A stretch of 64,000 bases of DNA from positions 124,001 through 188,000 of the IMG/VR virus record IMGVR_UViG_3300008113_000003; one strand, written 5' to 3'. Positions 16,890 through 57,344 of the stretch are shown in pieces. How positions within the stretch are numbered: position 1 is the stretch's first letter; the number at the start of each line of letters is the position of its first letter. A model generated the notes under the pieces. It made no database searches, had not been told where the DNA came from, and saw nothing but the letters and a program-made list of their open reading frames with translations. A program made the translations under genes and the position numbers.

Positions 16890-16942
16890 ATATTAAATTT
16901 AATGATTATTGCTTAACTATAAATATTAAACATTCTGTTTTA

Positions 16943-30199: not shown

Positions 30200-31291
30200 A
30201 TGAGAATAAATCCAACCGAAAAGCAAAAAATATACAAACAAGCCAAACATAGGCTTGGGGCTCCTATTAGGAAGATTCAATTAGAAGATGAACAAATGGA
30301 CTCACTTCTTGAAATCGCTACAGAAGATTATGTTGAGTTTATTAATAATTGGTTGATTGAACACCAATGGCCGAGTTTGATTGGTTTAAGCGTTAGCGAA
30401 GCTGATTTAACCAGGGCTTTTATTTATAGAACTTTTGATTTAGTCACACAATACACATACTCCTACTCAAAAATTGTTGGTTTGGGTGCTGGTGAGGGTG
30501 GTTATGTTCTTAAAAAAGATTACGTTGAGTTAGTTAAGGGTCAACAAATATATGAGATTCCAGCAAATAGAGAGATAAATGAAGTGTTATGGTTTACACC
30601 AGCTTCATTGGATCAATCTGTAATCGACCCATTCTTAGGTGTTTGGAACAATCAATTCGGTGCCGAATATATGGGTTTGGGTAGTTATTACATTTTACCA
30701 GCTTTTGACATTTTAATGAGAACAACGGATAGAAACCTTAAAAATAGGATGATTCGTTCTGAGTTAATATATAAGATCACAAATGCGCCTGATGGCAAAA
30801 AATATCTTCATTTAATGAATACGCCAGGTGGTAAATTTGACTTTAGGGGTTCAATGCTAGATCAAGGTAAATGTTGGTATTGGTATTATGATATTAACCC
30901 ATTAATTAAAGATGATTGTTTGGCAAAAAACAAAGATATCATTAAATCACCAGCTGATGTTCCTCTGGATGATATATCATTTGATGACCTAAATGATCCA
31001 GCTAAAGTTTGGATTAGAAGATATTTTATTGCTTTGTGTAAAGAAACTTTGGGTAGAGTAAGAGGTACTTTTGGTGGTAAAATACCAGTTCCAGACGCAA
31101 ATATGGAAATTGAATACCAGTCACTTTTATCAGAAGGTAAGGATGAAATGGTTACACTTAAAAAAGAATTAGAGGACAGAATGTTCAAATTAAACCCATT
31201 GGAAATTCTTAAAAGAATGTCTACTGAGGCTGAAGAAATTAACAAAGCTCTTAAATACAGAGCGTTCCAAAAACCAATTAAGATTATATAA
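30200..31291 (+). CDS. Neck / head-tail adaptor (T4 gp13-like), about 363 aa; start at 30200 preferred
   Basis: HRLGAPIRKIQLEDEQM..LLEIA; WIRRYFIALCKETLGRVRG.FGG.IP. Confidence 0.75.
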   Translation: MRINPTEKQKIYKQAKHRLGAPIRKIQLEDEQMDSLLEIATEDYVEFINNWLIEHQWPSLIGLSVSEADLTRAFIYRTFDLVTQYTYSYSKIVGLGAGEGGYVLKKDYVELVKGQQIYEIPANREINEVLWFTPASLDQSVIDPFLGVWNNQFGAEYMGLGSYYILPAFDILMRTTDRNLKNRMIRSELIYKITNAPDGKKYLHLMNTPGGKFDFRGSMLDQGKCWYWYYDINPLIKDDCLAKNKDIIKSPADVPLDDISFDDLNDPAKVWIRRYFIALCKETLGRVRGTFGGKIPVPDANMEIEYQSLLSEGKDEMVTLKKELEDRMFKLNPLEILKRMSTEAEEINKALKYRAFQKPIKII

Positions 31292-32946
31292 TGTTTTATA
31301 CAGCCCTAGATAATAGTGATTATTTTGATTTAATTGTCACAAAAGATTGTCGTGATTTTTATCGTGATTATAACGAATGTAATTTAATAAATATTAATAT
31401 TACTGAAAATCTATGCTCAATACCTGGGAGTATTCAAACAGAAGAAGTTGAATTAAAAAACATAACGTTAACAGGTTATGATAATTTTTTTATACCCAAC
31501 GGAGAGATATCAAATATCAATAATTTCACGGGTGACACAATAGGATACACTGTGAATGAAAATATTGTTGTTGACGTTAATAAAGATTTAACATATGTTA
31601 TTGAAACTGGTGATACTTTTTGTTTTCATGAAATATCTGGTTATAGCGGAAATTACTGTTATGAGATTGATCACCTAAATGTTGACAATGGTATATACTA
31701 TAATAAATTAAATGGCGGTTTTTACCAGGGATTCTACAAAATTTTTGGTGAAAATGTTGAGTGGTTCCCAGCTAGAGCAAAAATGGGTTGGACCGTTGAT
31801 ATGGTTGTCCATTTCCCAATGGATGTACCAGGTAGTTCAGGGTCATCTGGTAGTTCAGGGTCTTCTGGATCATCTGGCAGTTCTGGTTCTTTTGGGTCTT
31901 CTGGATCATCAGGTAGTTCTGGGTCATCTGGTAGTTCAGGGTCTTCTGGATCATCTGGTAATTGCGTAACTCTAAATAAAGTATATCCAAATAATAGCGG
32001 TTTTATTTTTTATCTGGGGACAAGAGCTGAAAATAAATTTGCTGATAAAACTGATATTGAAATTCAAAGATTTGAGGATAATTACGACATAGTACCTCTA
32101 AACACAACAAATTTATTTACCTATAATAACCTAATAACATTAAATGGTTTAACGAATTATATTGGTTATTTTAATTATTATAATGGTTTAATGTATACTG
32201 GTAGAAATTATACAGTAGACTCACAACCTTTACAATACCACCAAGAATATAGTGATCTCACGTATAATGCGTTTGGTATAAGAGTCACCAATGATGGTAG
32301 AATCGGTTACAGAACAATATACCCAACTGATATATGTTATACAGGCGTAACCCAAGAAGTTAGTGGTATAACAAACAACTCGTTTATTATGGACCCAATT
32401 GATGACTGTGTTAATTATACAAGATCACTAATTGTTACAAAATATTTTACAATAGAGGAGTGTTATACAAAAAACCCTGTTATTGATGTAACGGAAAATA
32501 AATTCTTGAATATAACTGGTGTATTTGAAAGAGATTTTTCTTATGGGAATAACTGTCAGTTAAAATATGGTGATTATAAAAAAGGTACCTTCTCAATATA
32601 CCTTAATGGGTTCTTAGTTTTTAGGAATAGGAATTTTGTTGAGGTGATACCACATGAATTAGATATTGATTCGAAATACCAGGAAGGTGTCCCCTTTAAT
32701 ATTTCATTTGGTGGTGGGACCCAAAGCTTAATCGACCCTGTGGTATTTGATGAAAACAAAGTACTTGGTACTGTTTTAGAAAGATTTTTTGCTGGAACAT
32801 TCCTAGGTGGTGTTAAATCAATTAAAATGTATTGTGTACCATTGTACACTGTTGAGGTTAAAAAAGAATTTAGAAATATTGCGGGTATATATAATTTGCC
32901 GATAATAAAGGGTGGTAGACAGATATTTATAAAAAATTTATTCTAA
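31291..32946 (+). CDS. Hypothetical virion protein with an internal (Gly-Ser-Ser)n tract (551 aa)
   Basis: TAATG coupling to the neck gene; beta-rich, possibly LamG-like C-terminal part (weak). Confidence 0.7.
   Translation: MFYTALDNSDYFDLIVTKDCRDFYRDYNECNLININITENLCSIPGSIQTEEVELKNITLTGYDNFFIPNGEISNINNFTGDTIGYTVNENIVVDVNKDLTYVIETGDTFCFHEISGYSGNYCYEIDHLNVDNGIYYNKLNGGFYQGFYKIFGENVEWFPARAKMGWTVDMVVHFPMDVPGSSGSSGSSGSSGSSGSSGSFGSSGSSGSSGSSGSSGSSGSSGNCVTLNKVYPNNSGFIFYLGTRAENKFADKTDIEIQRFEDNYDIVPLNTTNLFTYNNLITLNGLTNYIGYFNYYNGLMYTGRNYTVDSQPLQYHQEYSDLTYNAFGIRVTNDGRIGYRTIYPTDICYTGVTQEVSGITNNSFIMDPIDDCVNYTRSLIVTKYFTIEECYTKNPVIDVTENKFLNITGVFERDFSYGNNCQLKYGDYKKGTFSIYLNGFLVFRNRNFVEVIPHELDIDSKYQEGVPFNISFGGGTQSLIDPVVFDENKVLGTVLERFFAGTFLGGVKSIKMYCVPLYTVEVKKEFRNIAGIYNLPIIKGGRQIFIKNLF
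31831..31959 (+). repeat. About 14 tandem Gly-Ser-Ser triplets (9-bp degenerate coding repeat)
   Basis: ggtagttcagggtcatct... repeated; translation GSSGSS...GSFGSS...G. Confidence 0.95.
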
Positions 32947-33352: not shown

Positions 33353-33383
33353 TTTGTTTTTTTAGATTTTATACTTATATTTG
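33353..33383 (+). promoter_or_regulatory. Bacteroidota-type housekeeping promoter of the DNA polymerase
   Basis: TTTG (33353-33356), 19-nt spacer, TATATTTG (33376-33383), matching TTTG-N19-21-TAnnTTTG. Confidence 0.7.
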
Positions 33384-39418: not shown

Positions 39419-39442
39419 GATTCTAACTAGAAAAAATAAATG

Positions 39443-39472
39443 ATGGGGGATTTGATATTCCCCATTTTTTTT
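39443..39472 (+). terminator. Rho-independent terminator ending the 36.5-39.4 kb operon
   Basis: ATGGGGGA-TTTGATA-TTCCCCAT followed by a T run. Confidence 0.8.
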
Positions 39473-39531
39473 GTACTTTTGTTTTGATTTTTCCTTAATT
39501 TTTACTATTATTATGGAAACATAGTCAACTT

Positions 39532-40752
39532 ATGAGTAAAATTAACATATTGGTACAACCAAATGACCGAGCTGGTTCGGGTAAATATAGATGCGTAGAT
39601 CCTCACGTGACTTTACAAAATAATAATCCAGATGATTTTTTTGTTGAAATTAATGAAAACGTTAATTTTAATGATGATAGCTATTTAAAAAAGTTCCAAT
39701 TATTCTTTTTCCATAGGGCTCCAGGCGGTAACTATCTACAGGGTGTTGAGATTATTAAGAAGATTAAGTCATTTGGTGGTAAAGTAATCATTGACTTGGA
39801 TGACCATTGGAATTTAGACCCATCACACGGTTTATATCAAACTTCAAAAAAGAATGATATTCCGCTACACACAATTAATATTGTAAGAGAGGCTGATTTA
39901 GTAACAGTTTCAACCCACTTTTTACAGAAAGAGGTTTTAAAATATAACAAAAAATGCGTTGTATTGGCAAACGCTATAAACCCTAACGAAACACAGTTTA
40001 AACCACAACCCAGTCAGTCTGATAAATTAAGATTTGGTTGGTTAGGTGGTTCTTCACACGTTAAGGATATCGAATTGTTAAAAGGCGTACCACAAAGATC
40101 AAATGAGTACGGTGATAAAATGCAAATTGTTTTATGTGGGTATGACACCAGGGGTAAAGTTAAAGCAATACACCCAGAAACTGGTCAGGTTATGGAAAGA
40201 GATATGCAACCTGTTGAAACAACTTGGTTTATGTACGAAATATTTTTAACAGACCACTTTAAAACCATCAAAGATCAAGAGTACATCAAACATTTATTAA
40301 AATTTGATCAAACCCTTAATTATGATGATAAGAACATGCCGTATAGAAGAATATGGACTAAATCTATTGATACTTACGCAAAGGGTTATAATGAATTTGA
40401 TGTGGCTTTAGCGCCATTAAACGATAGTTCTTTTAACATGTATAAATCACAATTAAAAGTTATTGAGGCTGGTTTCCATAAAAAGGCTATTATTGCACAA
40501 AATTATGGCCCTTACACTATTGATCTAATTTCTTCAATTGAAAAAGGTGGTGGATTTAACCCAAAAGGTAACGCTTTGTTAGTTGAGCCGAGTAAAAATC
40601 ACAAACAATGGAGTCAACATATCAAAAGATTAATTGATAATCCTAATCTTGTTGAGGATCTTGGTGAAAAATTATACGAAACTGTTAAAGACAGATATGA
40701 TATAAATTACGTAACAAAATTGAGAGTTGAAATTTATAAAACATTAATATAA
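39532..40752 (+). CDS. GT-B fold glycosyltransferase (406 aa)
   Basis: IDLDDHW, ADLVTVST, RFGWLGGSSH, FDVALAPL...FN..KSQLKVIEAG. Confidence 0.8.
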   Translation: MSKINILVQPNDRAGSGKYRCVDPHVTLQNNNPDDFFVEINENVNFNDDSYLKKFQLFFFHRAPGGNYLQGVEIIKKIKSFGGKVIIDLDDHWNLDPSHGLYQTSKKNDIPLHTINIVREADLVTVSTHFLQKEVLKYNKKCVVLANAINPNETQFKPQPSQSDKLRFGWLGGSSHVKDIELLKGVPQRSNEYGDKMQIVLCGYDTRGKVKAIHPETGQVMERDMQPVETTWFMYEIFLTDHFKTIKDQEYIKHLLKFDQTLNYDDKNMPYRRIWTKSIDTYAKGYNEFDVALAPLNDSSFNMYKSQLKVIEAGFHKKAIIAQNYGPYTIDLISSIEKGGGFNPKGNALLVEPSKNHKQWSQHIKRLIDNPNLVEDLGEKLYETVKDRYDINYVTKLRVEIYKTLI

Positions 40753-40753
40753 C

Positions 40754-41338
40754 ATGAACGATAGATTAGAAAATTTAAACATGGACGATCTTTTTGATGA
40801 TGAAACCAAAAATGAACTGGATAATATCCTAAAACAAACCCAACATATGATGGGTGATTGGGATTATGATCCAAATGACATGACAATTAAATTAAAGGTT
40901 TCTTTTATTAATAAATCAAATAACCCCGATCCAACTTATGAAAAAGAGGGTGATAGTGGTTTTGATATCAGAGCGAATAATGATAAAACGATTGAAATTG
41001 AGCCTGGACACAGAGCTTTAATACCAACAGGCTTGTATTTTGAAATACCCATGGGTTATGAATTACAAGTTAGGTCCAGAAGTGGACTTGCATTAAAAAA
41101 TGGTATTATGGTTTTAAATAGCCCTGGCACCGTTGATTCTGGTTATAGGGGTGAGGTTGGTGTTATTTTACATAACTCAGATAAATCAGCACCTTTTTAT
41201 GTTCACAAAGGTGATAGAATAGCACAAGGTGTTATCGCTGCTGTACAAACAATGGGTAAAACTAAATTTATAAAAACAAACGAACTATCAAGTAGCGACA
41301 GAGGTACTGGTGGTTTCGGATCAACTGGTATTAATTAA
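40754..41338 (+). CDS. dut: Trimeric dUTPase (194 aa)
   Basis: SGFDI, RSRSGLA, GTVDSGYRGEV, GDRIAQ, RGTGGFGSTG. Confidence 0.95.
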   Translation: MNDRLENLNMDDLFDDETKNELDNILKQTQHMMGDWDYDPNDMTIKLKVSFINKSNNPDPTYEKEGDSGFDIRANNDKTIEIEPGHRALIPTGLYFEIPMGYELQVRSRSGLALKNGIMVLNSPGTVDSGYRGEVGVILHNSDKSAPFYVHKGDRIAQGVIAAVQTMGKTKFIKTNELSSSDRGTGGFGSTGIN

Positions 41339-41643
41339 TGGTAGTATTTAAAGATCAAATAAAAGCTTATAAAGCGATCACACAAGATATCTTAAACCAG
41401 ATAGAATATAAAACTGTTTGGTCTGGTAAAAGAATTGAGGTGGGTGATAAAGTTTTGTACGCATTTGTATACCCTTTAAATTCAGAGGACTATAAATTAG
41501 CAACGTTCCTTGAACGTGAATTAGATGAAGTTAACCAAATCTTCACCTATGTACAAACAATAAAAGGTATTATACCTGTATTAAAATATAAAAATGATAA
41601 TCTTGTGAGAGATTTAATCATAGAGGAAGAGGATGAGTCATAA
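41338..41643 (+). CDS. Hypothetical protein (101 aa)
   Basis: TAATG-coupled to dUTPase. Confidence 0.7.
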   Translation: MVVFKDQIKAYKAITQDILNQIEYKTVWSGKRIEVGDKVLYAFVYPLNSEDYKLATFLERELDEVNQIFTYVQTIKGIIPVLKYKNDNLVRDLIIEEEDES

Positions 41644-43069
41644 AATTAGTATCGTTTTCTCAACGAGAAAAATAGAAAATAGTTTCATTGAACATGTTAA
41701 AAAAACATGTATGTATAAGGGTGTTGAAGTTTTGCCTTATGAAAATAAGGGTGAATATTCTTTAACCGAAATATATAATAAGGGTTTAAACGAGGCATCA
41801 AGCGATATTGTTATTTTTTGTCATGACGATATCTTGTTTGAAACAAAAAATTGGGGTGAAAAAGTTTTAAAAGCTTTTGAAAAAAACCCTGAATATGGTA
41901 TTCTTGGTGTTGCTGGTACTAACCACATGATTAGTGGTATGTGGTGGGAAGTGCGTAATGCGATGCATGGAACTGTTAAACATACCGATGGTGTAAAAAC
42001 ATGGACAAACAAATACTCCGCAAATTACGGCAACCAATTAAAAGAAATGGTTGCTGTTGACGGTTTATTTATTGCTGTTAATAAGGCCAAAATAGAAAAT
42101 GTTTTTGATGATAGATTTAAAGGTTTTCATTTTTATGATATATCATTTTGTTTATCAAACCATATTAACGGTGTCAATATTGGGTTAATATCAAATATAA
42201 CAATATTACATAAATCTGTTGGCCAAGTTAATGAACAATGGATGGAAAATAAAACTTTGTTTGAAGAAATATATGGCGATAAATTACCTATTTGTTTAAA
42301 CGAAGAAACAAAACATATTATCTTCGATAAAGAATTACCAAAGATTGATATGCATGTTCTTTGTTGGAATGAGGAAAAGATTATACCATACTTCTTAAAT
42401 CACTATGAAAATTTTGTTACAAACATTATTGTTTACGATAATAAATCAAATGATAACACCAATAAACTTTTAAAAGCGCACCCAAAGGTTACTATTATAC
42501 CTTATGACACAAATGGGGAAATAAGAGATGACGCTTATCTTCAAATAAAAAACAACGCCTGGAAAAATTCAATCGGTAAAGCTGATATTGTTATAGTTTG
42601 CGATATGGATGAATTTTTGTATGCGGAAGATTTTAAATCAGCGATTATTGAGTTTAATAACAGCGATGCCACGATAGTTAAACCAACTGGGTATGATATG
42701 ATTGTTTCTGATTTTAATTTTGATTATACAAATAAATTAACAGACCTTGTTAAAACTGGTTATAAAAACAACCTCTTTGATAAGATGGTTATGTTTAAGA
42801 CAAAAAACATAACTGATATGAATTATAACGGTGGTTGTCACGTAGCGGCACCTAGAGGTAACAAAGTTAGTCTATTTGAAAATAAATTCTTATTACTACA
42901 TTATAAAAGACTTGGGTTAAAATATTTTTTAAATAAAATGTCTGCTTACAGAAAAAGGTTAAGTGATTTTAATAAAAAATATAAGCTTGGTTATGAATAT
43001 GAATTTGATAACAATAAACATACCGAAGATTTTAATGAGTCTTTAAATAAAATAGTTGAGGTTATTTAA
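41633..43069 (+). CDS. Two-domain GT-A family glycosyltransferase (478 aa)
   Basis: N-terminal domain IFCHDDI...GVAG...VDGLFIA...FHFYD; second domain LCWNEE..IPYFL.HY...VYDN.S.D...CDMDEF. Confidence 0.75.
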   Translation: MSHKISIVFSTRKIENSFIEHVKKTCMYKGVEVLPYENKGEYSLTEIYNKGLNEASSDIVIFCHDDILFETKNWGEKVLKAFEKNPEYGILGVAGTNHMISGMWWEVRNAMHGTVKHTDGVKTWTNKYSANYGNQLKEMVAVDGLFIAVNKAKIENVFDDRFKGFHFYDISFCLSNHINGVNIGLISNITILHKSVGQVNEQWMENKTLFEEIYGDKLPICLNEETKHIIFDKELPKIDMHVLCWNEEKIIPYFLNHYENFVTNIIVYDNKSNDNTNKLLKAHPKVTIIPYDTNGEIRDDAYLQIKNNAWKNSIGKADIVIVCDMDEFLYAEDFKSAIIEFNNSDATIVKPTGYDMIVSDFNFDYTNKLTDLVKTGYKNNLFDKMVMFKTKNITDMNYNGGCHVAAPRGNKVSLFENKFLLLHYKRLGLKYFLNKMSAYRKRLSDFNKKYKLGYEYEFDNNKHTEDFNESLNKIVEVI

Positions 43070-43102
43070 GTTTAGCAACTATTTAATTTAAAAAAATATT
43101 GT

Positions 43103-44110
43103 ATGGGATTTTTTAGGATAAAAAAAAGAGTAAAGACTGATAATAATTCTGAGGTCAATACCGTTGATTTTAATAATGAAAGTGATGACATTGTGGAAGA
43201 AAGATTACCTGAAACGCAAAAATCTTCAATCAGAAAAAAATATACAGGTGATAACACTGGTGAACCATACATGAGTAAGCAACCAAAAATTATTAAAGTA
43301 GAAACCGAAAAACCTATAAATAAGTTTTTTAAGAAGAATGATCGTATTATAGATTATTCAATGCCAGATATAACTGAAACGTTTGGTGTTATCGATAACA
43401 TTAATAAAGTAAAACCTTACCCTTTTAGACAAAGAAGATTAGCGGTCTTTATACATATGTATTACCCAGATTTATGGGATACACTAGATTCATACTTAAA
43501 TAATATCAGGTGTGATTTTGATTTATATGTTAATATTGTTATAGATAACTATGATCAAGAAACTGTGTATAAAATAATTGACAAATACCCAAATGCTAAA
43601 ATAATAAAAAATATTAATAAAGGTAGGGATATCGGTGGGTTAATAACGATGTCAAAATATATTATTAAAAATCAGTATGACTCCATATATTTTATACACA
43701 CAAAGAAAAGCCCGCATTTAAAAAGTGGTCATGTTTGGAGAACTGATATGTTAAACACTTTAATGGGTAGTGAAACAAAAATAACTAATTTTATAAAAGA
43801 TATAAGATATAACGATGTTGGTTTAATAGCACCTGGATTATATCTGACAAAATCAATGGGTAGTAACTACAATAACCTAAAAAGACTTTTAAATTTATAT
43901 GAAATCGAATATGATTTAAATAATTTAGAGTTTTCGGCTGGAACTTTTTTCTTATGTAGTGCGGAATTAATTGAAGAAATAGGTTCATTAATGGATTTAT
44001 CTTATTTTGAAGACGGTTCTGATTTAGATGGGCAGATGGCTCATGCTTTTGAAAGATTTTTACCTATACTAATAACAAAGAAAATTAATAAAACAACAAA
44101 ATATGTCTAA
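43103..44110 (+). CDS. Rhamnan-synthesis RgpF-like protein with an N-terminal extension (335 aa)
   Basis: LAVFIHMYYPDL, NKGRDIGG, IHTKKSPH...WR..M...L, FSAGTFF, DG.MAHAFER. Confidence 0.75.
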   Translation: MGFFRIKKRVKTDNNSEVNTVDFNNESDDIVEERLPETQKSSIRKKYTGDNTGEPYMSKQPKIIKVETEKPINKFFKKNDRIIDYSMPDITETFGVIDNINKVKPYPFRQRRLAVFIHMYYPDLWDTLDSYLNNIRCDFDLYVNIVIDNYDQETVYKIIDKYPNAKIIKNINKGRDIGGLITMSKYIIKNQYDSIYFIHTKKSPHLKSGHVWRTDMLNTLMGSETKITNFIKDIRYNDVGLIAPGLYLTKSMGSNYNNLKRLLNLYEIEYDLNNLEFSAGTFFLCSAELIEEIGSLMDLSYFEDGSDLDGQMAHAFERFLPILITKKINKTTKYV

Positions 44111-45185
44111 GCCAAAAATTATTTGTTTTTATTTACCACAATTCCATCCTTTTGACGAAAACGATACTTTTTGGGGGCGTGGTTTTACCGAGTGGAATAA
44201 TTTATATGATGTAAAAACATTTCACAAAGACCAAAAATTTATGAGAACATCATATGAATTTGGGGATTATGATTTAAGAAGTTATAAAGTTAGAAAAAGA
44301 CATGCTGAATTAGCTAAAGAGCATGGTATTGACGGTTTTTGTCTTTACCATTATTGGTTTTATGGGCACCCAGGTAATAAAGTTATGTACGAAGTTGCGG
44401 AAAGGATGTTAGAAGACGGTGAACCAAACATAAATTTTTGTTTTGAATGGGCAAATGAACCGTGGACAAAAACATGGGATGGGATGGAGAAAAACTATCT
44501 GATTAAACAAGAGTATGGTTCTGAAAAAGACTGGACCGAACATTTTAATTATTTACTTAAGTTTTTTAAACATAAAAATTACATAAAAGTGGATAATAAA
44601 CCAATGTTTCTTGTTTATAGAATGGAGCATTTTAAAGAGTTTGATAAATTTAAAGATTTTTTTAATCAACTGGCTATAAAAGAAGGTTTTGACGGAATTA
44701 TTTTTTCACAAACATTAAACCATTTTAACCAGGATGGTAGTAATTATGGTGTTAATAAAAACGCTGATGCTTATATTGAATACCACCCAATGTTCATAAA
44801 TAGGTTTTCTAAACCAGAACCAGAAAGCAATGAAAAAGCGACAATTTTTTATGCGCCAAAAAAATGGGAAAAAATTGTTAAATTTAAAAAACCAGAAGAA
44901 ATTGGTGACAAGCCGTACATACGTGGTTTTTATAGCGGTTGGGATTCTTCGCCAAGAGCTAAGAATAGATCGGCTACTATTGATCTTTACAATGACCCAA
45001 AAACCTTTGAATTTTATTTAAAACAACAAATAGAAAATGTTGTTGAAGATAACAACGAACCGTATAATTATTTATTTATTTTTGCCTGGAATGAGTGGGG
45101 TGAAGGTGCGGTAATTGAACCAAGTGATTTATACGGAAATCAATATTTACTTGCTATAAAAAATTCATTGAATGGCGTTAAATAA
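44103..45185 (+). CDS. WbsX-like glycosyltransferase / GH99-like domain protein (360 aa)
   Basis: FYLPQFHP..END.FWG.GFTEW, LAKEHGIDGFC.YHYWF, WANEPWT.TWDG, GWDSSPR, FAWNEWGEG...EP. Confidence 0.85.
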   Translation: MSKPKIICFYLPQFHPFDENDTFWGRGFTEWNNLYDVKTFHKDQKFMRTSYEFGDYDLRSYKVRKRHAELAKEHGIDGFCLYHYWFYGHPGNKVMYEVAERMLEDGEPNINFCFEWANEPWTKTWDGMEKNYLIKQEYGSEKDWTEHFNYLLKFFKHKNYIKVDNKPMFLVYRMEHFKEFDKFKDFFNQLAIKEGFDGIIFSQTLNHFNQDGSNYGVNKNADAYIEYHPMFINRFSKPEPESNEKATIFYAPKKWEKIVKFKKPEEIGDKPYIRGFYSGWDSSPRAKNRSATIDLYNDPKTFEFYLKQQIENVVEDNNEPYNYLFIFAWNEWGEGAVIEPSDLYGNQYLLAIKNSLNGVK

Positions 45186-45813
45186 AGTCTGCATAATATC
45201 ATTAAAATATTTAGAACCGTATTGGGAGTCAACGCAAAAAAATATAGTTGACTCGAAATTGCCAGTAATATACGTTGACAGGGGTGGTGTTGGCTCAATG
45301 ACAACAGCTTTTAATAGTTGCATACCAAAATTACACGAATTGTTTAATGATAATTTACCAGAATATTTGTTTTTTGTAACAAATAATAATTTTACATTAG
45401 ATACTATTAATAGATTAGTTGAATCAATGGATAGTACAGGTTTTGCTGCAATACACCCAACACATGATAGTGATCACCCATCTCATGTGAATAATAAATC
45501 TGGACAAGTTATTGAAACAAAATACATTGAGTGGACATCACCAATTGTTAGAACTGATTTGTTTTTAAAATATCCTTTAAATGAAAATTATCATTATTGG
45601 TTTTTTGATTTGGTTTGGAGTTTTGAAATCAAAAAGCTTGGTTATAAAATTGGTGTCGATCATGGCGCTTTTGTTGATCACAGGTATCTTGTGAAAGATT
45701 TATCAAACCCAATATCCAAAAAAAGAAAAGAATTAAGAGACGCTAGAAATGCTATTGAATATCAAATACTAAATAAGGATTATGGTAATAATTGGCAATT
45801 AATTCTTATGTAA
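45172..45813 (+). CDS. Putative GT-A-like protein (213 aa)
   Basis: IEWTSPIVR, YWFFDL.W...G..IGVDH pattern; context in the glycan cassette. Confidence 0.45.
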   Translation: MALNKVCIISLKYLEPYWESTQKNIVDSKLPVIYVDRGGVGSMTTAFNSCIPKLHELFNDNLPEYLFFVTNNNFTLDTINRLVESMDSTGFAAIHPTHDSDHPSHVNNKSGQVIETKYIEWTSPIVRTDLFLKYPLNENYHYWFFDLVWSFEIKKLGYKIGVDHGAFVDHRYLVKDLSNPISKKRKELRDARNAIEYQILNKDYGNNWQLILM

Positions 45814-45823
45814 ATAAATTTAG

Positions 45824-46261
45824 ATGGAAGTAACAAAAATATTAATTGATTTTGATGGTGTCTTAACGGATGGTAAGATATATTATACACACAATGGTGA
45901 ACAGTTTAAAGGTACCAACACACGTGATGTTAGGGCTATTAGGGAATTAATATCATATGGATATGATGTTATTATATTAACTGCAAGTAGTTGGCCAGGT
46001 TCAGAAACTTTCGCCAAAAAAACGGGATCGGAGATTGTTATATCAAAGGATAAAAAACTTTTTGCCGACCAGTTAAACGAAAAATTTATTGCTGTTGGTG
46101 ATGATGTCTGGGATCTTGGTTTAATAGAAAAATCAGAAAGATTCTTCGCACCAAAAGATTGCGATAGGGCAATTCGTTATAGTAGTAATAAAATTGAAAT
46201 ACTTAACTGTAAAGGCGGTGAAGGCGTTATAGCCGAACTGGTATGGTTATTATGTAAATAA
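45824..46261 (+). CDS. KdsC-like HAD sugar-phosphate phosphatase (145 aa)
   Basis: DFDGVLTDG.IYY...GE..K....RD, VGDD..D, GGEGVIAEL. Confidence 0.8.
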   Translation: MEVTKILIDFDGVLTDGKIYYTHNGEQFKGTNTRDVRAIRELISYGYDVIILTASSWPGSETFAKKTGSEIVISKDKKLFADQLNEKFIAVGDDVWDLGLIEKSERFFAPKDCDRAIRYSSNKIEILNCKGGEGVIAELVWLLCK

Positions 46262-46280
46262 ATAAAAACAAAAAAAATCT

Positions 46281-47045
46281 ATGAACACAAACAAAACAAA
46301 AACATCTTCTAGAAGAACAAGAAAAAAATTAACACCTGAAGAGGAGTATGAAGCTTTTGAGGCTATTAACAGAGCGCATAGCGGCAACGTTCTTGATAAG
46401 ATGAAAATTGACATCAAGTGTAAAACACAAAATCAAAAAAAATTAGTAACTGAAATAAAAAACAAAGAGATTGTTATTTGTTCTGGGTTACCAGGTACTG
46501 GTAAAACCTTCTTATCTTGCGCTGTAGCGCTAGAACTCCTTAAGACTGACCCTAAATACCGAAAAATTGTTATCGTTAAATCTGTAACAACTTTGAAAGA
46601 TGAGGAGATTGGGTTTTTAAAAGGTACTATGAAAGAAAAGATGGAACCATTTATGTACTCATTTATGCATAATTTTGAAAAAGTGGTTGGTAGACATAAT
46701 GTCGAGCTTTTAAGGGCTAATAATATGATTGAGGAAATGCCTATTGCTTATATGAGAGGTATTAATATTGATAACTCAATCACAATTATTGACGAGGCCC
46801 AAAACATCTCAATTGATAATATTAGAACTATTATGACCAGACTTGGTGAGAATTCTAAAATGATATTCTTGGGTGACGAGAATCAAATTGATATGAAAAA
46901 GAAGGGTGAAAGTTCTTTAAATTTCATTATCCAAAAATTTAGCGATTTTGACGAAGTTGGTACAATTACTTTGGGTGAGGATGATGTTGTTAGAAACCCG
47001 CTAATTAAAAAAATCGAAAAAATATTTAACGAAAGTAAAATGTAG
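46281..47045 (+). CDS. phoH: PhoH-family ATPase (254 aa)
   Basis: GLPGTGKT, IGFLKG...EKM.P, AYMRG, IIDEAQN, TRLGENSKMIFLGD..QID, DVVRNPLI. Confidence 0.93.
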   Translation: MNTNKTKTSSRRTRKKLTPEEEYEAFEAINRAHSGNVLDKMKIDIKCKTQNQKKLVTEIKNKEIVICSGLPGTGKTFLSCAVALELLKTDPKYRKIVIVKSVTTLKDEEIGFLKGTMKEKMEPFMYSFMHNFEKVVGRHNVELLRANNMIEEMPIAYMRGINIDNSITIIDEAQNISIDNIRTIMTRLGENSKMIFLGDENQIDMKKKGESSLNFIIQKFSDFDEVGTITLGEDDVVRNPLIKKIEKIFNESKM

Positions 47046-47097
47046 ACTTTATTTTAGGCTGAAACCATGTTATTTTTATACAAAAATAATCCATAAT

Positions 47098-47733
47098 ATG
47101 GTAATAGGTATTACGATAAATAACATTTTAAGAGAACACGTTAGTAAGTTAAAGGATTTATATGAATTTGAGTTTGAAAAAGAACCTATTTTACCTATAA
47201 ATCCTTTTGACTTATCTAAATCATTCCCAGATATTGAGGGTGAAACTGTTGACACAAATTTTGAAGTTGACAAAGAATTGGAGCTGTCCGAAAATAAAAA
47301 AGACACTTCTTTTAATTTAAGTAGATTCATGTATGAAGATGCGTGTTTTGAAGTATTTGGCCGTGTTGAGGAGAGCCAACCTGGGATTATTAAACAGATA
47401 TCCGATTTTTCAAATAAAAACAAAATAAAAATCGTTTTATTGAATAACGAGAGTCAAAGATCCAAATCAGCCACACTATTTTTTCTAAGTAAAAATTATT
47501 ACAATCTTGAGCAAATAATCTTCCCAAGTAAGTGGAAAGATTTTTGGTCGCATTGCGATGTTTTGGTTACAGATAACCCTAAACTGTTAAAAACCAAACC
47601 AAAGGATAAAATATCGATAAAATACAAAAATGATTTTAATGTTGACATTAAATCAGATTATACTATAATTAACATTGAAGAATTATTTAAAATCCTAAAA
47701 AAATTAAAGAAAGAACAAAATGGAAAAAACTAA
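47098..47733 (+). CDS. HAD-like 5'-nucleotidase-related protein, apparently degenerate (211 aa)
   Basis: Overall NT5C-like layout (IGI.IN.ILR...; DVLVTDNP), but motif I reads ITINN rather than DxD. Confidence 0.45.
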   Translation: MVIGITINNILREHVSKLKDLYEFEFEKEPILPINPFDLSKSFPDIEGETVDTNFEVDKELELSENKKDTSFNLSRFMYEDACFEVFGRVEESQPGIIKQISDFSNKNKIKIVLLNNESQRSKSATLFFLSKNYYNLEQIIFPSKWKDFWSHCDVLVTDNPKLLKTKPKDKISIKYKNDFNVDIKSDYTIINIEELFKILKKLKKEQNGKN

Positions 47734-48802
47734 CGAAATAGTTAAAAACATTGAATCAGCTATAAGTAAGATTCAAAACAAAGAACAAAAAATTGTTTTT
47801 TTGGTCCCAGACACTAAGGGTAATGCTAAATCAAGCGTTATTCACTTATATAAGCAAGCGTTAACACTTAAAAACTTAGGTTATAACGTTAGTATGCTAC
47901 ACGAAAAAAATGACTACATTAAAGTTGGGTCATGGTTAACGCCAGAATGCGATGAACTAGAGCATCTATCAATCGAAGATAACAATTTGGTTGTTGGTGC
48001 GTCAGATTTTATTATTGTACCAGAGGTGTACGGTAGTGTTTTTGAACAAATAAATAAAATGCCTTTAGAGAAAGTTATTTACGTACAATCATTTGATTAC
48101 ATGCTTGAAGCTTTTGCTCCTGGTAAATCTTGGGTTGATTTAGGTGCTGAGGAATGTATCACAACATCAAACACACTTAAAACAATGATTGAAGATACGG
48201 TTCCAGTTGAAGATGTTCAATTTATTGAACCAGCTATTTCAAACGAAACTTTCAATTTAAACGACAAACCGCAAAAACCTATTATTGCAATATATTGTCG
48301 TGAAGCTAGAAAAGCGGCTAAAATGATTAAGTCGTTTTACTTAAAATATCCAATCTACAGGTTTGTTTCTTTTAAAGATATGCACACAATGCCACAGGAT
48401 ACTTTTGCTAAGAACTTAAAGGAATGTTGTGTTTCTATATGGATTGATGATGACTCATCATTTGGTAGATACCCAGTTGAATCAATTAAATGTAATGTAC
48501 CTGTTATCGGTAAAGTACCTAATATTATCCCAGAGTGGATGACAGATGAAAATGGGGTTTGGGTTTATGACGAAAATCAAATACCTGAAATTTTATCTAG
48601 TTACATTAAAAATTGGTTAGAAGATACTTTACCAGAAAATTTATTAAATGTGGCAAAAACTGTCGATGGTAGATATACTGAAGAGACTTTTGAAAAAAGT
48701 ACTAAAGAGGTTTATGAATATCTTTTTAACAAGAAAATTTCAAAACTAGAAACAATAAAAGAAAATTTTAAAAAAGACCTAGAACAAAATGAACAAAACT
48801 AA
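47720..48802 (+). CDS. GT-B fold glycosyltransferase (360 aa)
   Basis: DFIIVPEVY, SFGRYPVESIKCNVPVIG (E-x7 type nucleotide-sugar-binding region). Confidence 0.65.
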   Translation: MEKTNEIVKNIESAISKIQNKEQKIVFLVPDTKGNAKSSVIHLYKQALTLKNLGYNVSMLHEKNDYIKVGSWLTPECDELEHLSIEDNNLVVGASDFIIVPEVYGSVFEQINKMPLEKVIYVQSFDYMLEAFAPGKSWVDLGAEECITTSNTLKTMIEDTVPVEDVQFIEPAISNETFNLNDKPQKPIIAIYCREARKAAKMIKSFYLKYPIYRFVSFKDMHTMPQDTFAKNLKECCVSIWIDDDSSFGRYPVESIKCNVPVIGKVPNIIPEWMTDENGVWVYDENQIPEILSSYIKNWLEDTLPENLLNVAKTVDGRYTEETFEKSTKEVYEYLFNKKISKLETIKENFKKDLEQNEQN

Positions 48803-49619
48803 TTTAACCGTTATAATTCCCGTACACTCAGTTGCTGATATTGGGAAACAAAAATTTGATGATTTATTCGATATAGCTTTATCATCAATCAGTAGAAATG
48901 AAACCAAACCAGAAAAGGTATTAATTGTAAGATGTAATTGCGTTGAAGTTGACGCTAAGTTAGAATCAATGGATTTTTCAAAATACGATTTGAACGTTGA
49001 AGTCATAGCAAATGATGGGGATACCGACTATCAAAGTCAAATAAATTACGCAGCAAAGCATGTTGACACAGAATACATGTCGATCTTAGAGTTTGATGAT
49101 GAGGTATCAAAAACATGGTATGGTAACGTTAAAACACATATTGAAGCTTATCCAGAAGTTGATATGTTTTTACCTATTGTTAATGATGTTTCTGAAGATA
49201 ACAGTTTTATAGGTTTATCAAATGAAGCTGTCTGGGCCTACAACTTTACCGAATCACTTGGTAATGTTGATTTAGAATGTTTATTGGAATACCCAAACAT
49301 CAGTCTTTGTGGTATGGTTATTAAAACAGCTGTTTTTAACGAAATTAACGGGTTTAAACAAATTAAGTTAACATTTAATTATGAATTTTTGTTACGTTTT
49401 CATAAAAACGGACATAAATCAATGGTTATTCCAAAAATTGGTTACAAACATGTTAACATGAGACAAGAATCATTGTTCTGGTTATATAAAAACAGTGAAG
49501 CTGTTGAATATAAAATGGACCCTAAACAAGCTTTATTTTGGATGGAAACCGCTAAAAAAGAATATTTGTTTAACGATGATAGGTATATAATATATGAGGA
49601 AAATGAAGTTAGTGAATAA
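48789..49619 (+). CDS. GT-A (GT2-like) glycosyltransferase (276 aa)
   Basis: LTVIIPVH, YMSILEFDD (DxD-like), YEFLLR. Confidence 0.7.
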   Translation: MNKTNLTVIIPVHSVADIGKQKFDDLFDIALSSISRNETKPEKVLIVRCNCVEVDAKLESMDFSKYDLNVEVIANDGDTDYQSQINYAAKHVDTEYMSILEFDDEVSKTWYGNVKTHIEAYPEVDMFLPIVNDVSEDNSFIGLSNEAVWAYNFTESLGNVDLECLLEYPNISLCGMVIKTAVFNEINGFKQIKLTFNYEFLLRFHKNGHKSMVIPKIGYKHVNMRQESLFWLYKNSEAVEYKMDPKQALFWMETAKKEYLFNDDRYIIYEENEVSE

Positions 49620-50332
49620 TGGCAAGACAGAAAAAAGATCGCAACTACTATGGTGTAGACCAGGAAAAAGCGGTGATCATGTTTCTGGAAGCTAAAACGG
49701 TTGGTGAAAGAGAAAAAATTTATAGAGAATACTTACAAGAACCTATCAATACCATGATAGAAAGTATTATCAGAACTTATAAATTATATAGACAATCATA
49801 CGAATTCCACGATTTACATGCTGACACGCTGTCATTCTTGATGACAAAATTTGATAAATTTAAACCTGAAAAGGGTAAAAGATCATTTTCGTACTTCGGT
49901 ACAATATGTAAAAATTACCTTTTTGGTGAAATGGTCAAAGAATATAAGAAAAATACATCTATCGTTGACATTGATCAATCAGAGGGTGATATTTTAAAAA
50001 GAGATGAATTATTATATCGTATTGATAATGAAGATCTTGACCTAACACTTTTTATTGAAACTTTAGCCAGCAATATAAAAGATGAATTGAAATCGGATGA
50101 TTTAAGTGAGAACGAATTTAAAGTCGGCCATTCACTGGTTAAAATACTTGAGGAGTGGCGTGAGCTATTTTCACAAGTTAATGACGGTAAAAACTCACCA
50201 AAATTCAATAAAAACCTAATATTATTATACATTCGTAATATGACTGGCCTAAATACTAAGGAAATTAGGAACAGTATGAAAAGATTTAAGTCATTATACC
50301 GTATTTTTAAGGATAATTATTTAGATGGTTGA
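49619..50332 (+). CDS. Phage sigma factor, T4 gp55-like (237 aa)
   Basis: EREKIY.E.L.......ESII; LSFLMTKFDKFKPEKGKRSFSYFGTICKNYL resembles sigma region 2 of gp55-like proteins. Confidence 0.6.
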   Translation: MARQKKDRNYYGVDQEKAVIMFLEAKTVGEREKIYREYLQEPINTMIESIIRTYKLYRQSYEFHDLHADTLSFLMTKFDKFKPEKGKRSFSYFGTICKNYLFGEMVKEYKKNTSIVDIDQSEGDILKRDELLYRIDNEDLDLTLFIETLASNIKDELKSDDLSENEFKVGHSLVKILEEWRELFSQVNDGKNSPKFNKNLILLYIRNMTGLNTKEIRNSMKRFKSLYRIFKDNYLDG

Positions 50333-50340
50333 TATTTATA
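50331..50340 (+). promoter_or_regulatory. Putative phage late promoter GATATTTATA
   Basis: Exact motif at the sigma-factor stop, 16 nt upstream of ATG 50357. Confidence 0.65.
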
Positions 50341-57312: not shown

Positions 57313-57344
57313 TTTGGTTATTTAAAAAGTTTTACTTATATTTG
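57313..57344 (+). promoter_or_regulatory. Bacteroidota-type housekeeping promoter
   Basis: TTTG 57313-57316, 20-nt spacer, TATATTTG 57337-57344. Confidence 0.65.

What the first reader, a model, noticed from the sequence alone, without database searches (positions are those of the whole stretch)
39532..49619. About 10-kb phage glycosylation locus with six or more glycosyltransferase-type genes
Seen: GT-B (406 aa), double GT-A (478 aa), RgpF-like, WbsX-like, GT-A-like (213 aa), GT-B (360 aa) and GT-A (276 aa), interleaved with dut, a KdsC-like phosphatase, phoH and a HAD-like gene. No Wzx/Wzy/ABC exporter, nucleotide-sugar synthase or hydroxymethylase is visible in the window, and the GTs look soluble. 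Inference: cytoplasmic synthesis of a complex glycan on virion proteins using host nucleotide sugars, as in giant-virus fibril glycans. Alternatives are DNA hypermodification or remodelling of host LPS.
Basis: partly seen in the sequence, partly recalled or inferred. Interest (0 to 1): 0.6.

Follow-up and report, generated by a model that had tools for sequence, protein, structure and literature searches.

The report
Phage sugar-chain locus with swappable cassette
A large freshwater phage carries a real cluster of seven soluble sugar-adding enzyme genes whose middle part is swapped between close relatives, so it probably makes a strain-variable glycan; what the glycan is attached to is still unknown.

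Summary
Window 39532-49619 encodes seven glycosyltransferase-type genes (eight domains), interleaved with dUTPase, a KdsC-type phosphatase, PhoH and a HAD-fold protein. None has a predicted membrane helix.

New findings:
- The locus looks like one transcription unit (about 39.45-50.33 kb), starting at a terminator plus a Bacteroidota-type promoter.
- Two glycosyltransferase blocks conserved across the lineage flank a 3.2-kb cassette (43070-46260). In relatives with 74-95% identical polymerase, other sugar genes replace this cassette: NeuB, CMP-sugar synthetase, sialyltransferase-like, GT8, GT11, GT14, GT25, and pyruvyl- and methyl-transferases.
- A second sugar cluster lies directly after the major capsid gene, outside the window.
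- No exporter, flippase or lipid-carrier initiating enzyme occurs, even in a complete 362-kb relative.
- CCGG and CGCG are totally absent from the 206 kb. This argues against DNA hypermodification.

Best reading (about 0.45): cytoplasmic glycosylation of the phage's own proteins, probably Ser/Thr-rich fibres or the capsid. The main rival (about 0.3) is remodelling of host envelope glycans. Similar polymorphic multi-glycosyltransferase clusters are already described in large aquatic phages, so this is a new member of a known kind whose acceptor is unproven.

The parts
39442..39466 (+). Intrinsic terminator (G+C hairpin plus T-run) that closes the upstream unit
   Evidence: Best terminator-like site in 36-53 kb. 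The same hairpin is conserved in relatives L034 and L032.
39451..39481 (+). Bacteroidota-type promoter-like element TTTG-N19-TACTTTTG, about 50 nt before the first glycosyltransferase gene
   Evidence: The pattern occurs 40 times in the genome against 16 expected. Twenty sites are intergenic, including the one before PolB. In relatives it sits before the extra PfkB-like gene. Function is inferred, not shown.
39532..40752 (+). GT-B glycosyltransferase (406 aa), left conserved block
   Evidence: PHROG 7162 8e-41. phi92 gp164-like, 27% identity. 66-92% identical in all relatives.
40754..41338 (+). dUTPase (194 aa)
   Evidence: PF00692 3.8e-24. Conserved in synteny.
41338..41643 (+). Conserved 101-aa acidic protein of unknown function
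   Evidence: No family hit. 65-93% identical in relatives.
41633..43069 (+). Double GT-A glycosyltransferase (478 aa), end of the left conserved block
   Evidence: PF13712 5e-26 and PF13704 8e-17. Invariant HDD and DMD motifs.
43070..46260 (+). Swappable cassette. Nucleotide homology to relatives with other cassettes stops near 43000-43250 and resumes at 46257-46311.
   Evidence: blastn breakpoints. Different gene sets in L053-L057 and L062.
43103..44110 (+). RgpF-family (rhamnan-synthesis-type) glycosyltransferase, 335 aa, in the cassette
   Evidence: PF05045 1.3e-27. Only 26-45% identical, or absent, in relatives with other cassettes.
44103..45185 (+). WbsX / GH99-like family protein, 360 aa, in the cassette
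   Evidence: PF14307 8e-92. Naming and about 40% cellular homologs. Absent from most relatives.
45172..45813 (+). GT-A-fold protein (213 aa) without a DXD motif, in the cassette
   Evidence: AlphaFold plus Foldseek: TarP, AvpGT, RmlT, E about 1e-4. Only 10 homologs found.
45824..46261 (+). KdsC/YrbI-type HAD-IIIA sugar-acid-phosphate phosphatase (145 aa), in the cassette
   Evidence: TIGR01670 1.6e-19, below the curated cut-off. Catalytic motifs are present.
46281..47045 (+). PhoH-like ATPase, first gene of the right conserved block
   Evidence: PF02562 4e-57. 77-96% identical in relatives.
47098..47733 (+). HAD-fold, deoxyribonucleotidase-like protein lacking the catalytic Asp motif (211 aa); a core gene of the lineage
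47720..48802 (+). GT-B glycosyltransferase (360 aa), related to AmGGT/Agt
   Evidence: Profile against PDB 8xsg, 2.4e-9. The family has only 613 clusters in 1.84 billion representatives. Syntenic with the next gene even in distant viral contigs.
48789..49619 (+). GT-A (GT2) glycosyltransferase, 276 aa
   Evidence: PF00535 25.3 bits, above the 23.3 cut-off. DDE motif. TagF N-domain 8e-6.
49619..50332 (+). Very conserved 237-aa protein, last gene of the unit; function unknown and probably not a sugar enzyme
   Evidence: No hits. 73-95% identical in relatives, 80% in distant L062.
50331..50340 (+). GATATTTATA, the motif found 4-60 nt before most virion genes; marks the start of the next (late-type) unit
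   Evidence: 27 upstream instances, including the tail sheath. About 14-fold enriched in upstream regions.
31291..32946 (+). Fibre-like protein with 15 GSS repeats; one of five Ser/Thr-rich repeat proteins proposed as candidate acceptors
   Evidence: Inference only.

Best explanation
The locus is a cytoplasmic glycan assembly line of a freshwater jumbo myophage whose host is probably a member of the Bacteroidota.

Shown:
- Seven soluble glycosyltransferase-type genes form what looks like one transcription unit.
- Two blocks conserved across the lineage flank a 3.2-kb cassette: GT-B + double GT-A on the left, GT-B + GT-A on the right.
- Close relatives carry entirely different sugar-building and sugar-decorating genes in that cassette.
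- A second conserved cluster sits directly after the major capsid gene: three glycosyltransferases, a carbamoyltransferase and a methyltransferase.

Inferred:
- The conserved enzymes build a common inner oligosaccharide. The cassette enzymes add a strain-specific outer part: rhamnose or Kdo-type sugars here; nonulosonic acid, fucose-type, methyl or pyruvyl groups in relatives.
- The acceptor is the phage's own protein, glycosylated in the cytoplasm before assembly. The most likely targets are the Pro-free Gly-Ser/Thr repeat fibres or the capsid.
- The result would be a variable sugar coat on the virion, as in chloroviruses, mimiviruses and mycobacteriophages.
For: - Gene identities.
- Solubility and no exporter. 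No transmembrane segment in the locus. No Wzx, WecA-type, Bac_transf or ABC-2 permease in the own record or six relatives, including a complete 362-kb genome.
- Conserved flanks and swapped cassette with sharp nucleotide breakpoints.
- The conserved GT-B/GT-A pair is as conserved as the polymerase. It stays syntenic in relatives with 39% identical polymerase and in distant viral contigs. Its family is small, 613 clusters in 1.84 billion. This fits a phage-owned acceptor better than a host-specific one.
- The only solved relative of that GT-B is AmGGT. Its close homologs (Agt) extend glucose chains on peptides in the cytoplasm.
- One relative's cassette holds a weak MptE-like (PF01973) domain, in a cassette that also holds NeuB and a CMP-sugar synthetase. 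From my own knowledge, this domain occurs in Maf flagellin nonulosonic-acid transferases.
- The second sugar cluster abuts the capsid gene and is conserved.
- Five proteins are 28-36% Ser+Thr in G-[STE]-S repeats. One lies next to that second cluster.
- Most of the glycosyltransferases are acidic, pI 4.7-6.4. This is unlike what I recall for typical membrane- or DNA-bound transferases (own knowledge).
- Precedents from the literature: Freeman 2023 as cited in PMC12619734; PMC4691112.
Against: - No glycan, glycoprotein or expression data exist. No RNA run holds the phage.
- The locus, and also the capsid-adjacent cluster, starts at a host-sigma-type promoter after a terminator, like the polymerase and most non-structural genes. 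It does not start at the ATATTTATA motif of most virion genes.
- The families in the cassettes (GT8, GT9, GT11, GT25, RgpF, WbsX, KdsC) are classic LPS, LOS and O-antigen families. LPS core assembly needs no phage exporter, because the host's MsbA and Lpt would do it.
- No initiating protein glycosyltransferase was identified. There is no GT41/NGT.
- The published interpretation of similar clusters is host-surface remodelling (PMC7824862, PMC12801897).
Confidence: 0.45

Rival explanations
1. Remodelling of host envelope glycoconjugates during infection. The targets would be LPS/LOS core, O-antigen, capsule or the Bacteroidota protein O-glycan. The soluble phage transferases would act on host lipid-linked intermediates at the inner face of the membrane, and host machinery would export the product. 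The effect would be to mask receptors against superinfection or against loss of progeny on debris.
For: - The enzyme families are those of LPS, LOS and O-antigen pathways.
- The unit has a host-type promoter of the class that precedes replication and other non-structural genes.
- There are KdsC-type and heptose-pathway-like genes.
- This is the interpretation given for polymorphic clusters of jumbo cyanophages and gut phages (PMC7824862, PMC12801897, PMC8008677).
- Absence of an exporter is not an argument against LPS-core modification.
Against: - Five conserved catalytic domains are kept across a lineage down to 39% polymerase identity, in a small family found here only in phage-like contexts. 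This is unusual for accessory exclusion genes.
- Most of the transferases are acidic.
- There is no initiating transferase or membrane anchor.
- No lytic phage has been shown experimentally to do this with such a cluster (own knowledge).
Confidence: 0.3
2. DNA hypermodification. The transferases would build glycans on hydroxylated pyrimidines of phage DNA to evade nucleases, as in T-even phages, RB69/DLP3 and the metaviromic clusters of Pyle et al.
For: - Glycosyltransferases are interleaved with dUTPase, PhoH and a deoxyribonucleotidase-like protein, next to the replication module.
- LPS-like transferases, Kdo and heptose are known on phage DNA (10.1101/2023.12.21.572611).
- A ThyA homolog exists in the genome.
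- The 252-kb phage G008 has a divergent second ThyA homolog 12 kb from its RgpF/WbsX genes.
Against: - CCGG is 0 observed against 168 expected, and CGCG 0 against 119. Several 6-bp palindromes are absent. Palindromes are depleted overall, and the avoided sites differ between relatives. This shows that the DNA is exposed to restriction.
- There is no C5-methyltransferase and no Tet/JBP match, though the Tet/JBP search rang in no control genome.
- The ThyA homolog scores as a true thymidylate synthase, keeps the dUMP-specific Asn and the C-terminal tail, and lies 155 kb away.
- Eight to eleven transferase domains plus sialic, methyl and pyruvyl decorations far exceed the known DNA glycans of three sugars or fewer.
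Confidence: 0.05
3. Another soluble acceptor, or no single pathway. The acceptor could be host proteins, small molecules or free oligosaccharides. Alternatively, the genes could be a collection of unrelated transferases that merely share an operon.
For: - The acceptor is unknown.
- AmGGT itself uses free oligosaccharides.
- The operon also carries unrelated nucleotide-metabolism genes.
Against: - Synteny of the blocks is stable over long evolutionary distance.
- Cassette-style replacement happens at one fixed site.
- Sugar-activation genes occur together with matching transferases, for example NeuB + CMP-synthetase + sialyltransferase-like. This points to one coordinated pathway.
Confidence: 0.15

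Closest known systems
Polymorphic sugar / 'cell-wall modification' gene clusters of large aquatic T4-like cyanophages (P-SSM2, S-SCSM1, S-SCSM2R), as described by Iyer et al. 2021 (PMC7824862) and in PMC12801897
   Same: - Many glycosyltransferases of several families (GT2, GT4, GT11, GT25).
- PfkB kinase, cytidylyltransferase-like, cupin, epimerase, Kds genes, methyl- and carbamoyl-transferases.
- Content differs between related phages.
- No experimental function.
   Different: - Different phage lineage and probable host phylum (Bacteroidota-type promoters).
- Here there is a fixed architecture of two conserved blocks around one exchange site.
- Nonulosonic-acid modules occur in relatives.
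- A second cluster sits beside the capsid gene.
'Moraphages', aquatic jumbo phages of Bacteroidota with four core glycosyltransferase orthogroups (PMC12619734)
   Same: - Freshwater habitat and size class. CheckV puts this 206-kb record at 69% complete, and homologs lie on contigs of up to 307-310 kb.
- PolB, T4-like portal, predicted Bacteroidota host.
- Glycosyltransferases belong to the core genome.
   Different: - Membership could not be shown. No DnaJ or HSP20 was found in the 206 kb, and the sample accessions seen do not match the paper's table.
- The paper does not describe the cassette.
Giant-virus glycosylation clusters (Megavirinae fibril glycans; chlorovirus capsid N-glycans; review PMC4691112)
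   Same: - Virus-encoded, cytoplasmic, soluble enzymes.
- Conserved core plus clade-specific outer part.
- Methyl and pyruvyl decorations.
- Fibre or capsid acceptors.
   Different: - Those are eukaryotic viruses, and their glycans and acceptors are chemically proven. Here nothing is proven.
- No detectable sequence relationship was tested.
Mycobacteriophage virion glycosylation (Freeman et al. 2023, cited in PMC12619734)
   Same: - Phage glycosyltransferases modify capsid and tail proteins in the cytoplasm.
- The transferase genes lie next to structural genes. Here the second cluster lies after the capsid gene.
   Different: - Those phages have one to a few transferases in the late operon.
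- Here there are 10 genes in two clusters, each behind its own host-type promoter.
Cytoplasmic N-glycosylation system NGT + Agt (alpha-1,6-glucosyltransferase) of Actinobacillus and Haemophilus; AmGGT structure 8xsg (PMC12159676)
   Same: The conserved 360-aa GT-B is the only locus protein with a significant solved relative, and that relative is AmGGT (2.4e-9 over about 245 residues).
   Different: - No NGT/GT41 homolog in this phage or six relatives.
- Identity is low.
- The acceptor-specificity motif was not examined.
Phage DNA-glycosylation gene clusters (T-even; RB69/DLP3, PMC13326640; Pyle et al., 10.1101/2023.12.21.572611)
   Same: - GT-A and GT-B enzymes resembling TarP, BshA or LPS enzymes.
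- HAD, kinase and cytidylyltransferase helpers.
- Position near replication genes.
   Different: - No dedicated hydroxypyrimidine-generating enzyme.
- Strong restriction-site avoidance.
- Far more transferases and decorations.

Membership tests
GT-A fold family-2 glycosyltransferases (478-aa and 276-aa proteins) | Match to GT2-type Pfam models above the curated cut-off | tested here: met
   PF13712 92 bits, PF13704 62 bits, PF00535 45 bits for the 478-aa protein. PF00535 25.3 bits against a 23.3 cut-off for the 276-aa protein.
GT-A fold family-2 glycosyltransferases (478-aa and 276-aa proteins) | Acidic DXD-type metal and nucleotide-sugar binding motif | tested here: met
   Invariant H64-D65-D66 and D324-M325-D326. 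Invariant D103-D104-E105. The 213-aa GT-A-like protein has FFVTNN at the expected place: not met for that one.
RgpF (PF05045) rhamnan-synthesis transferases | Family match above cut-off | tested here: met
   97 bits against a cut-off of 25, covering profile positions 163-499 of 503.
RgpF (PF05045) rhamnan-synthesis transferases | Uses dTDP-rhamnose on a lipid-linked acceptor | not testable with these tools
   No dTDP-rhamnose pathway was seen apart from a truncated RmlD-like SDR 155 kb away.
WbsX (PF14307) | Full-length family match | tested here: met
   308.8 bits, profile positions 1-350 of 350. Whether the family transfers or hydrolyses sugars is unsettled: NCBI names members 'GH99-like'.
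KdsC/YrbI 2-keto-3-deoxy-sugar-acid phosphate phosphatases (TIGR01670) | Score above the curated cut-off | tested here: not met
   70.3 bits against a cut-off of 106.95. Treat as KdsC-like, not as a KdsC equivalog.
KdsC/YrbI 2-keto-3-deoxy-sugar-acid phosphate phosphatases (TIGR01670) | HAD catalytic motifs (DxDGVLTDG; GDD) | tested here: met
   IDFDGVLTDGK and VGDDVWD are present.
Wzx/Wzy- or ABC-dependent surface-polysaccharide locus | Own flippase/polymerase or ABC-2 exporter, and an initiating phosphoglycosyl transferase | tested here: not met
   No PF01943, PF01061, PF02397 or PF00953 in the own record or six relatives, including a complete genome. No multi-pass protein in the locus. Wzy (PF04932) was not searched.
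Phage DNA sugar-hypermodification cluster | A dedicated enzyme that makes the hydroxylated pyrimidine (specialised ThyA homolog, or C5-methyltransferase plus 5mYOX/TET), usually clustered with the transferases | tested here: not met
   No PF00145. No PF12851 either, but that search had no positive control. The ThyA homolog is TS-like: TIGR03284 222 bits, Asn in PFNIAS, and 155 kb away. The record is only about 69% complete, so absence is not proven.
Phage DNA sugar-hypermodification cluster | Genome protected from restriction, hence relaxed restriction-site avoidance | tested here: not met
   CCGG and CGCG are completely absent. Palindromes are depleted at p=0.002 and 3e-5. The same is seen in relatives.
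Virion-protein glycosylation systems (mycobacteriophage / giant-virus type) | Soluble virus-encoded transferases, with gene linkage to structural genes | tested here: inconclusive
   Soluble: yes. The window locus lies between the replication and head modules, under a host-type promoter. A second cluster directly follows the capsid gene but also has its own promoter.
Virion-protein glycosylation systems (mycobacteriophage / giant-virus type) | Glycan covalently attached to virion proteins | not testable with these tools
   Needs virions or metaproteomes.
NGT/Agt cytoplasmic N-glycosylation | HMW1C-like GT41 initiating enzyme | tested here: not met
   No PF13844 match in seven records. Only the Agt-like partner is seen.

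The most novel reading that the evidence does not exclude
These freshwater jumbo phages wear a serotype-like, exchangeable glycan coat. The coat would include nonulosonic acids in some strains. It would be built in the cytoplasm on Pro-free Gly-Ser/Thr fibre proteins and/or the capsid, by a virus-specific core glycosylation module plus a swappable outer cassette. This would be a bacteriophage counterpart of giant-virus fibril glycans, and the variation could tune adsorption or escape from glycan-binding host or environmental factors.
Probability: 0.3. Interest if true: 0.8.

Novelty: new member of a known kind. Interest (0 to 1): 0.5.

Why it matters
Multi-glycosyltransferase clusters are among the most common unexplained 'auxiliary' gene sets of large aquatic phages. 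Their target has never been measured for such phages, whether virion, host surface or DNA.

This lineage offers a clean natural experiment:
- The genomic frame is fixed.
- At least six different cassettes (six annotated here) sit at one site.
- The phage is abundant in lake and river metagenomes from 14 studies.
- The genome argues against the DNA option.

If the glycan sits on virions, phage particles would carry strain-specific sugar coats. That would affect how phages stick to hosts, particles and grazers. It would also widen virus-encoded protein glycosylation from giant viruses and mycobacteriophages to environmental phages of Bacteroidota.

Tried and rejected
**Searches that found nothing useful**
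- Megablast of the locus against 50,697 phage records: no match.
- PDB sequence searches for the 406-aa GT-B, RgpF and WbsX proteins: nothing significant.
- ESM Atlas look-ups of the 634-aa and 557-aa downstream proteins: no named relatives.
- The 237-aa protein at the end of the unit looked to me like a transcription factor. A profile search of the PDB gave nothing, so I make no claim.

**Moraphage membership**
- DnaJ and HSP20 are absent from the 206 kb.
- The sample accessions seen do not match the paper's list.
- Membership is left open.

**Expression**

**Read laying**
- I used it on 2,001 bases of the thyA region, within the operators' 6,000-letter limit.
- The aim was to tell whether the apparent 35-codon deletion and frameshift is real. 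Many organisms' thyA contigs pile up there, and the phage contigs break at the same spot. The result is inconclusive.

**Arguments dropped or downgraded**
- Co-transcription of the capsid-adjacent sugar cluster with the capsid gene: rejected. A terminator and a host-type promoter lie between them.
- Promoter class as a strict early/late clock: weakened. The endolysin also has a TAnnTTTG element.
- PDB entry 7msk, a weak hit of the second GT-A domain: it could not be identified from the literature, so I draw no inference from it.

**Tools and rules**
- No genetic code other than table 11 was used.

Full report
**What the window is.** The window is bases 124001-188000 of a single 206,296-bp viral contig. 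GC is 33.5%, there are no terminal repeats, and CheckV puts completeness at about 69%. It encodes a 1021-aa tail sheath, a family-B DNA polymerase, a T4-type large terminase and portal and, just beyond the window, a prohead protease and major head protein. It is therefore a jumbo myophage. No cultured phage is close: the polymerase is at most 25-28% identical to any. Near-identical DNA occurs in lake, river and freshwater metagenomes of 14 studies, and IMG/VR holds many relatives.

**Checking the observation.**
- Above curated Pfam cut-offs: both GT-A domains of the 478-aa protein, RgpF, WbsX, the 276-aa GT2, dUTPase and PhoH.
- The 406-aa GT-B is sub-threshold in Pfam but matches PHROG 7162 at 8e-41. 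It has homologs in a four-glycosyltransferase cluster of coliphage phi92 and its relatives.
- The 360-aa GT-B is confirmed by a profile hit to the solved glucosyltransferase AmGGT, 2.4e-9.
- The 213-aa protein has a GT-A fold by AlphaFold and Foldseek, but no DXD motif.
- The 145-aa protein is KdsC-like with intact catalytic motifs. It scores below the curated cut-off.
- The 211-aa protein has a deoxyribonucleotidase-like HAD fold but lacks the catalytic aspartates. It is a core gene of the lineage with 275 homologs.
- None of these proteins has a transmembrane-strength hydrophobic segment.
- WbsX-family proteins are often named 'GH99-like' by NCBI, so transferase activity is assumed, not known.

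- *One transcription unit.* A strong intrinsic terminator (39442-39466) is followed at once by TTTG-N19-TACTTTTG. No good terminator follows until the motif GATATTTATA at 50331-50340.
- *Two promoter-like classes.* The TTTG...TAnnTTTG pattern is the Bacteroidota sigma-A promoter consensus (own knowledge). It occurs 40 times against 16 expected. It lies before the polymerase and many non-structural genes. ATATTTATA lies 4-60 nt before 27 genes, including the tail sheath and the giant structural proteins.
- *Timing.* The locus therefore appears to be one unit from 39.45 to 50.33 kb, of the same promoter class as the replication genes. The class is not strictly early, because the endolysin has it too.
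- *Conserved flanks.* In relatives whose polymerase is 74-95% identical, the left block (GT-B, dUTPase, 101-aa protein, double GT-A) and the right block (PhoH, HAD-fold protein, GT-B, GT-A, 237-aa protein and onwards) are conserved at 62-97%.
- *Swapped middle.* The stretch 43070-46260 is replaced, with sharp nucleotide breakpoints.
- *Alternative cassettes.* Relatives carry:
  - two GT29-like proteins + CMP-sugar synthetase + NeuB;
  - the same plus GT8 and two methyltransferases;
  - a 681-aa multi-domain transferase + pyruvyl transferase + FkbM methyltransferase + GT14;
  - GT11 + GT25 + FkbM;
  - and, in a more distant relative, an MptE-like domain + CMP-synthetase + GT8 + NeuB + methyltransferases, with cytidylyltransferase-like and cupin genes upstream.
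- *A second variable site.* Many relatives have a PfkB-family kinase inserted exactly at the promoter site.
- *A second sugar cluster.* Outside the window, directly after the capsid gene, lies a conserved cluster: a 917-aa GT-B protein, an FkbM methyltransferase, a GT4, a NodU-type carbamoyltransferase and a GT9 heptosyltransferase-like protein.

**Which acceptor? DNA.** The 206 kb contains no CCGG (168 expected) and no CGCG (119 expected).
- Several 6-bp palindromes are absent, and palindromes are depleted overall.
- CCGG is absent from all close relatives. CGCG or GATC avoidance differs between relatives.
- Such lineage-specific purging means the DNA is seen by restriction enzymes. Wholesale base hypermodification should prevent that.
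- There is no C5-methyltransferase and no Tet/JBP match, although the Tet/JBP search had no positive control.
- The one ThyA homolog scores as a genuine thymidylate synthase with the dUMP-specific Asn.
- Recent work shows that LPS-like transferases, Kdo and heptose can decorate phage DNA (10.1101/2023.12.21.572611; PMC13326640). I keep this rival, but at about 5%.

**Which acceptor? Host envelope or phage protein.** The phage brings no Wzx, ABC-2 exporter, WecA-type or Bac_transf initiating enzyme. Neither do six relatives, including a complete 362-kb genome. This excludes an autonomous surface-polysaccharide pathway. It does not exclude decoration of host LPS core or other lipid-linked intermediates, which the host would export.

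Several observations lean towards a phage-owned acceptor:
- The GT-B/GT-A pair of the right block is as conserved as the polymerase.
- It is retained with its neighbours at 39-44% identity in the 362-kb relative, and in a distant contig that has a phage-like gene context.
- Its family has only 613 clusters among 1.84 billion representatives.
- Its only solved relative, AmGGT, is a homolog of the Agt enzymes that extend glucose on peptides in the cytoplasm.
- Most of the transferases are acidic.
- One sugar cluster abuts the capsid gene.
- The genome encodes five fibre-like proteins made largely of Pro-free G-[STE]-S repeats, 28-36% Ser+Thr. One lies next to the second cluster and carries 26 N-x-S/T sequons.

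Against a phage-owned acceptor:
- Both clusters have the host-type promoter class.
- The cassette enzymes have an LPS/LOS family flavour.
- No initiating protein transferase was identified.
- There are no expression or chemical data at all.

I therefore put virion or phage-protein glycosylation at about 0.45 and host glycan remodelling at about 0.3.

**Comparison with what is known.** Polymorphic clusters of glycosyltransferases, PfkB kinases, nucleotidyltransferases, cupins, epimerases and carbamoyltransferases are already described in jumbo cyanophages. They are interpreted, without experiments, as host-surface modification (PMC7824862, PMC12801897). A 2025 paper on aquatic 'moraphages' of Bacteroidota lists four glycosyltransferase orthogroups among core genes (PMC12619734). 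This phage may belong to that group, but I could not show it.

The kind of system is therefore known. What is new:
- the fixed two-block frame with a single exchange site;
- the nonulosonic-acid modules;
- the capsid-adjacent second cluster;
- the Agt-like enzyme;
- the restriction-avoidance argument against DNA as the target.

**Verdict.** This is a new member of a known kind, of moderate interest (0.5). It would rise to about 0.8 if a variable glycan coat on virions were demonstrated.

Noticed in passing
Whole 206-kb record including window 1-64000; relatives L004-L062: The tetranucleotides CCGG (0 observed, 168 expected) and CGCG (0 observed, 119 expected) are completely absent. GACGTC, CGTACG and GGCGCC are absent too, and GGTACC is halved. 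CCGG is absent in all close relatives. CGCG avoidance varies, and more distant relatives have no GATC at all. These look like strain-specific footprints of host restriction systems.
   Followed up: yes
Window 33353-33383, 39451-39481, 57313-57344 (TTTG-N17-21-TAnnTTTG); window 36522, 50332, 54537, 62482 and others (ATATTTAT): There are two classes of upstream motif. One is a Bacteroidota sigma-A-like -33/-7 promoter before PolB, the glycosyltransferase unit and many non-structural genes. The other is a phage-specific (G)ATATTTATA, 4-60 nt before 27 genes that are mostly structural; it is probably a late promoter. The first class supports a Bacteroidota host.
   Followed up: partly
Outside the window: G000:C1:193365-200532 (locus L050:6365-13532): A second, conserved sugar cluster lies directly after the major head protein gene. 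It holds a 917-aa GT-B protein, an FkbM methyltransferase, a GT4, a NodU-type carbamoyltransferase and a GT9 heptosyltransferase-like protein, followed by a glucosaminidase endolysin. It is preceded by a terminator and a host-type promoter.
   Followed up: partly
Window 31291-32946; outside the window G000:C1:52036-59270 (-) and 202003-204666 (-): Five fibre-like proteins carry long proline-free Gly-Ser/Thr/Glu-Ser triplet repeats (GTS, GES, GSS, GTN). One is 1225 aa with 166 triplets. An 887-aa one has a C-terminal S74-type chaperone domain.
   Followed up: partly
G000:C1:7079-8240 (-) (locus L043): The thymidylate synthase gene appears broken. The N-terminal 26 codons are followed by a frameshift and the loss of about 35 codons. 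A close relative has this part intact. Public contigs of the phage break at the same spot, so it may be an assembly artefact.
   Followed up: partly
Window 34483-34824 (PolB residues 364-477): The DNA polymerase carries an inserted segment matching PHROG 2072. It is 48-51% identical to stand-alone ORFs of Rhodobacter, Brevundimonas, Caulobacter and Rhizobium phages, far more similar than the polymerase itself.
   Followed up: no
Window 49619-50332: A 237-aa protein ends the glycosyltransferase unit, just before the first late-type motif. It is unusually conserved: 80% identical in a relative whose neighbouring genes are 51-61% identical. It may be a regulator of late transcription, but no database hit supports this.
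   Followed up: partly
G000:C1:3494-19630 (-) (locus L043): An RNA-repair module: two HAD_SAK_2 proteins, a cREC_REC domain, two RNA ligases, a poly(A)/CCA-type nucleotidyltransferase, an Rv2179c-like exoribonuclease and a metallophosphatase. Near them lie a ferritin-like protein, an FkbM methyltransferase and an RmlD/heptose-epimerase-like SDR.
   Followed up: no
Locus L061 (G008:C1:154608-155282) and L037: An unrelated 252-kb phage carries RgpF/WbsX homologs (42% and 57% identical). It also has a second, divergent ThyA homolog 12 kb from them. In that phage a DNA-modification role for such transferases would be worth testing.
   Followed up: no
Window 5326-14091 (-), 2065-5004 (-), 14130-19516 (-): Very large structural-region ORFs (2921, 979, 919 and 857 aa, plus 2413 and 2672 aa just outside the window) behind late-type motifs. 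They were not characterised.
   Followed up: no
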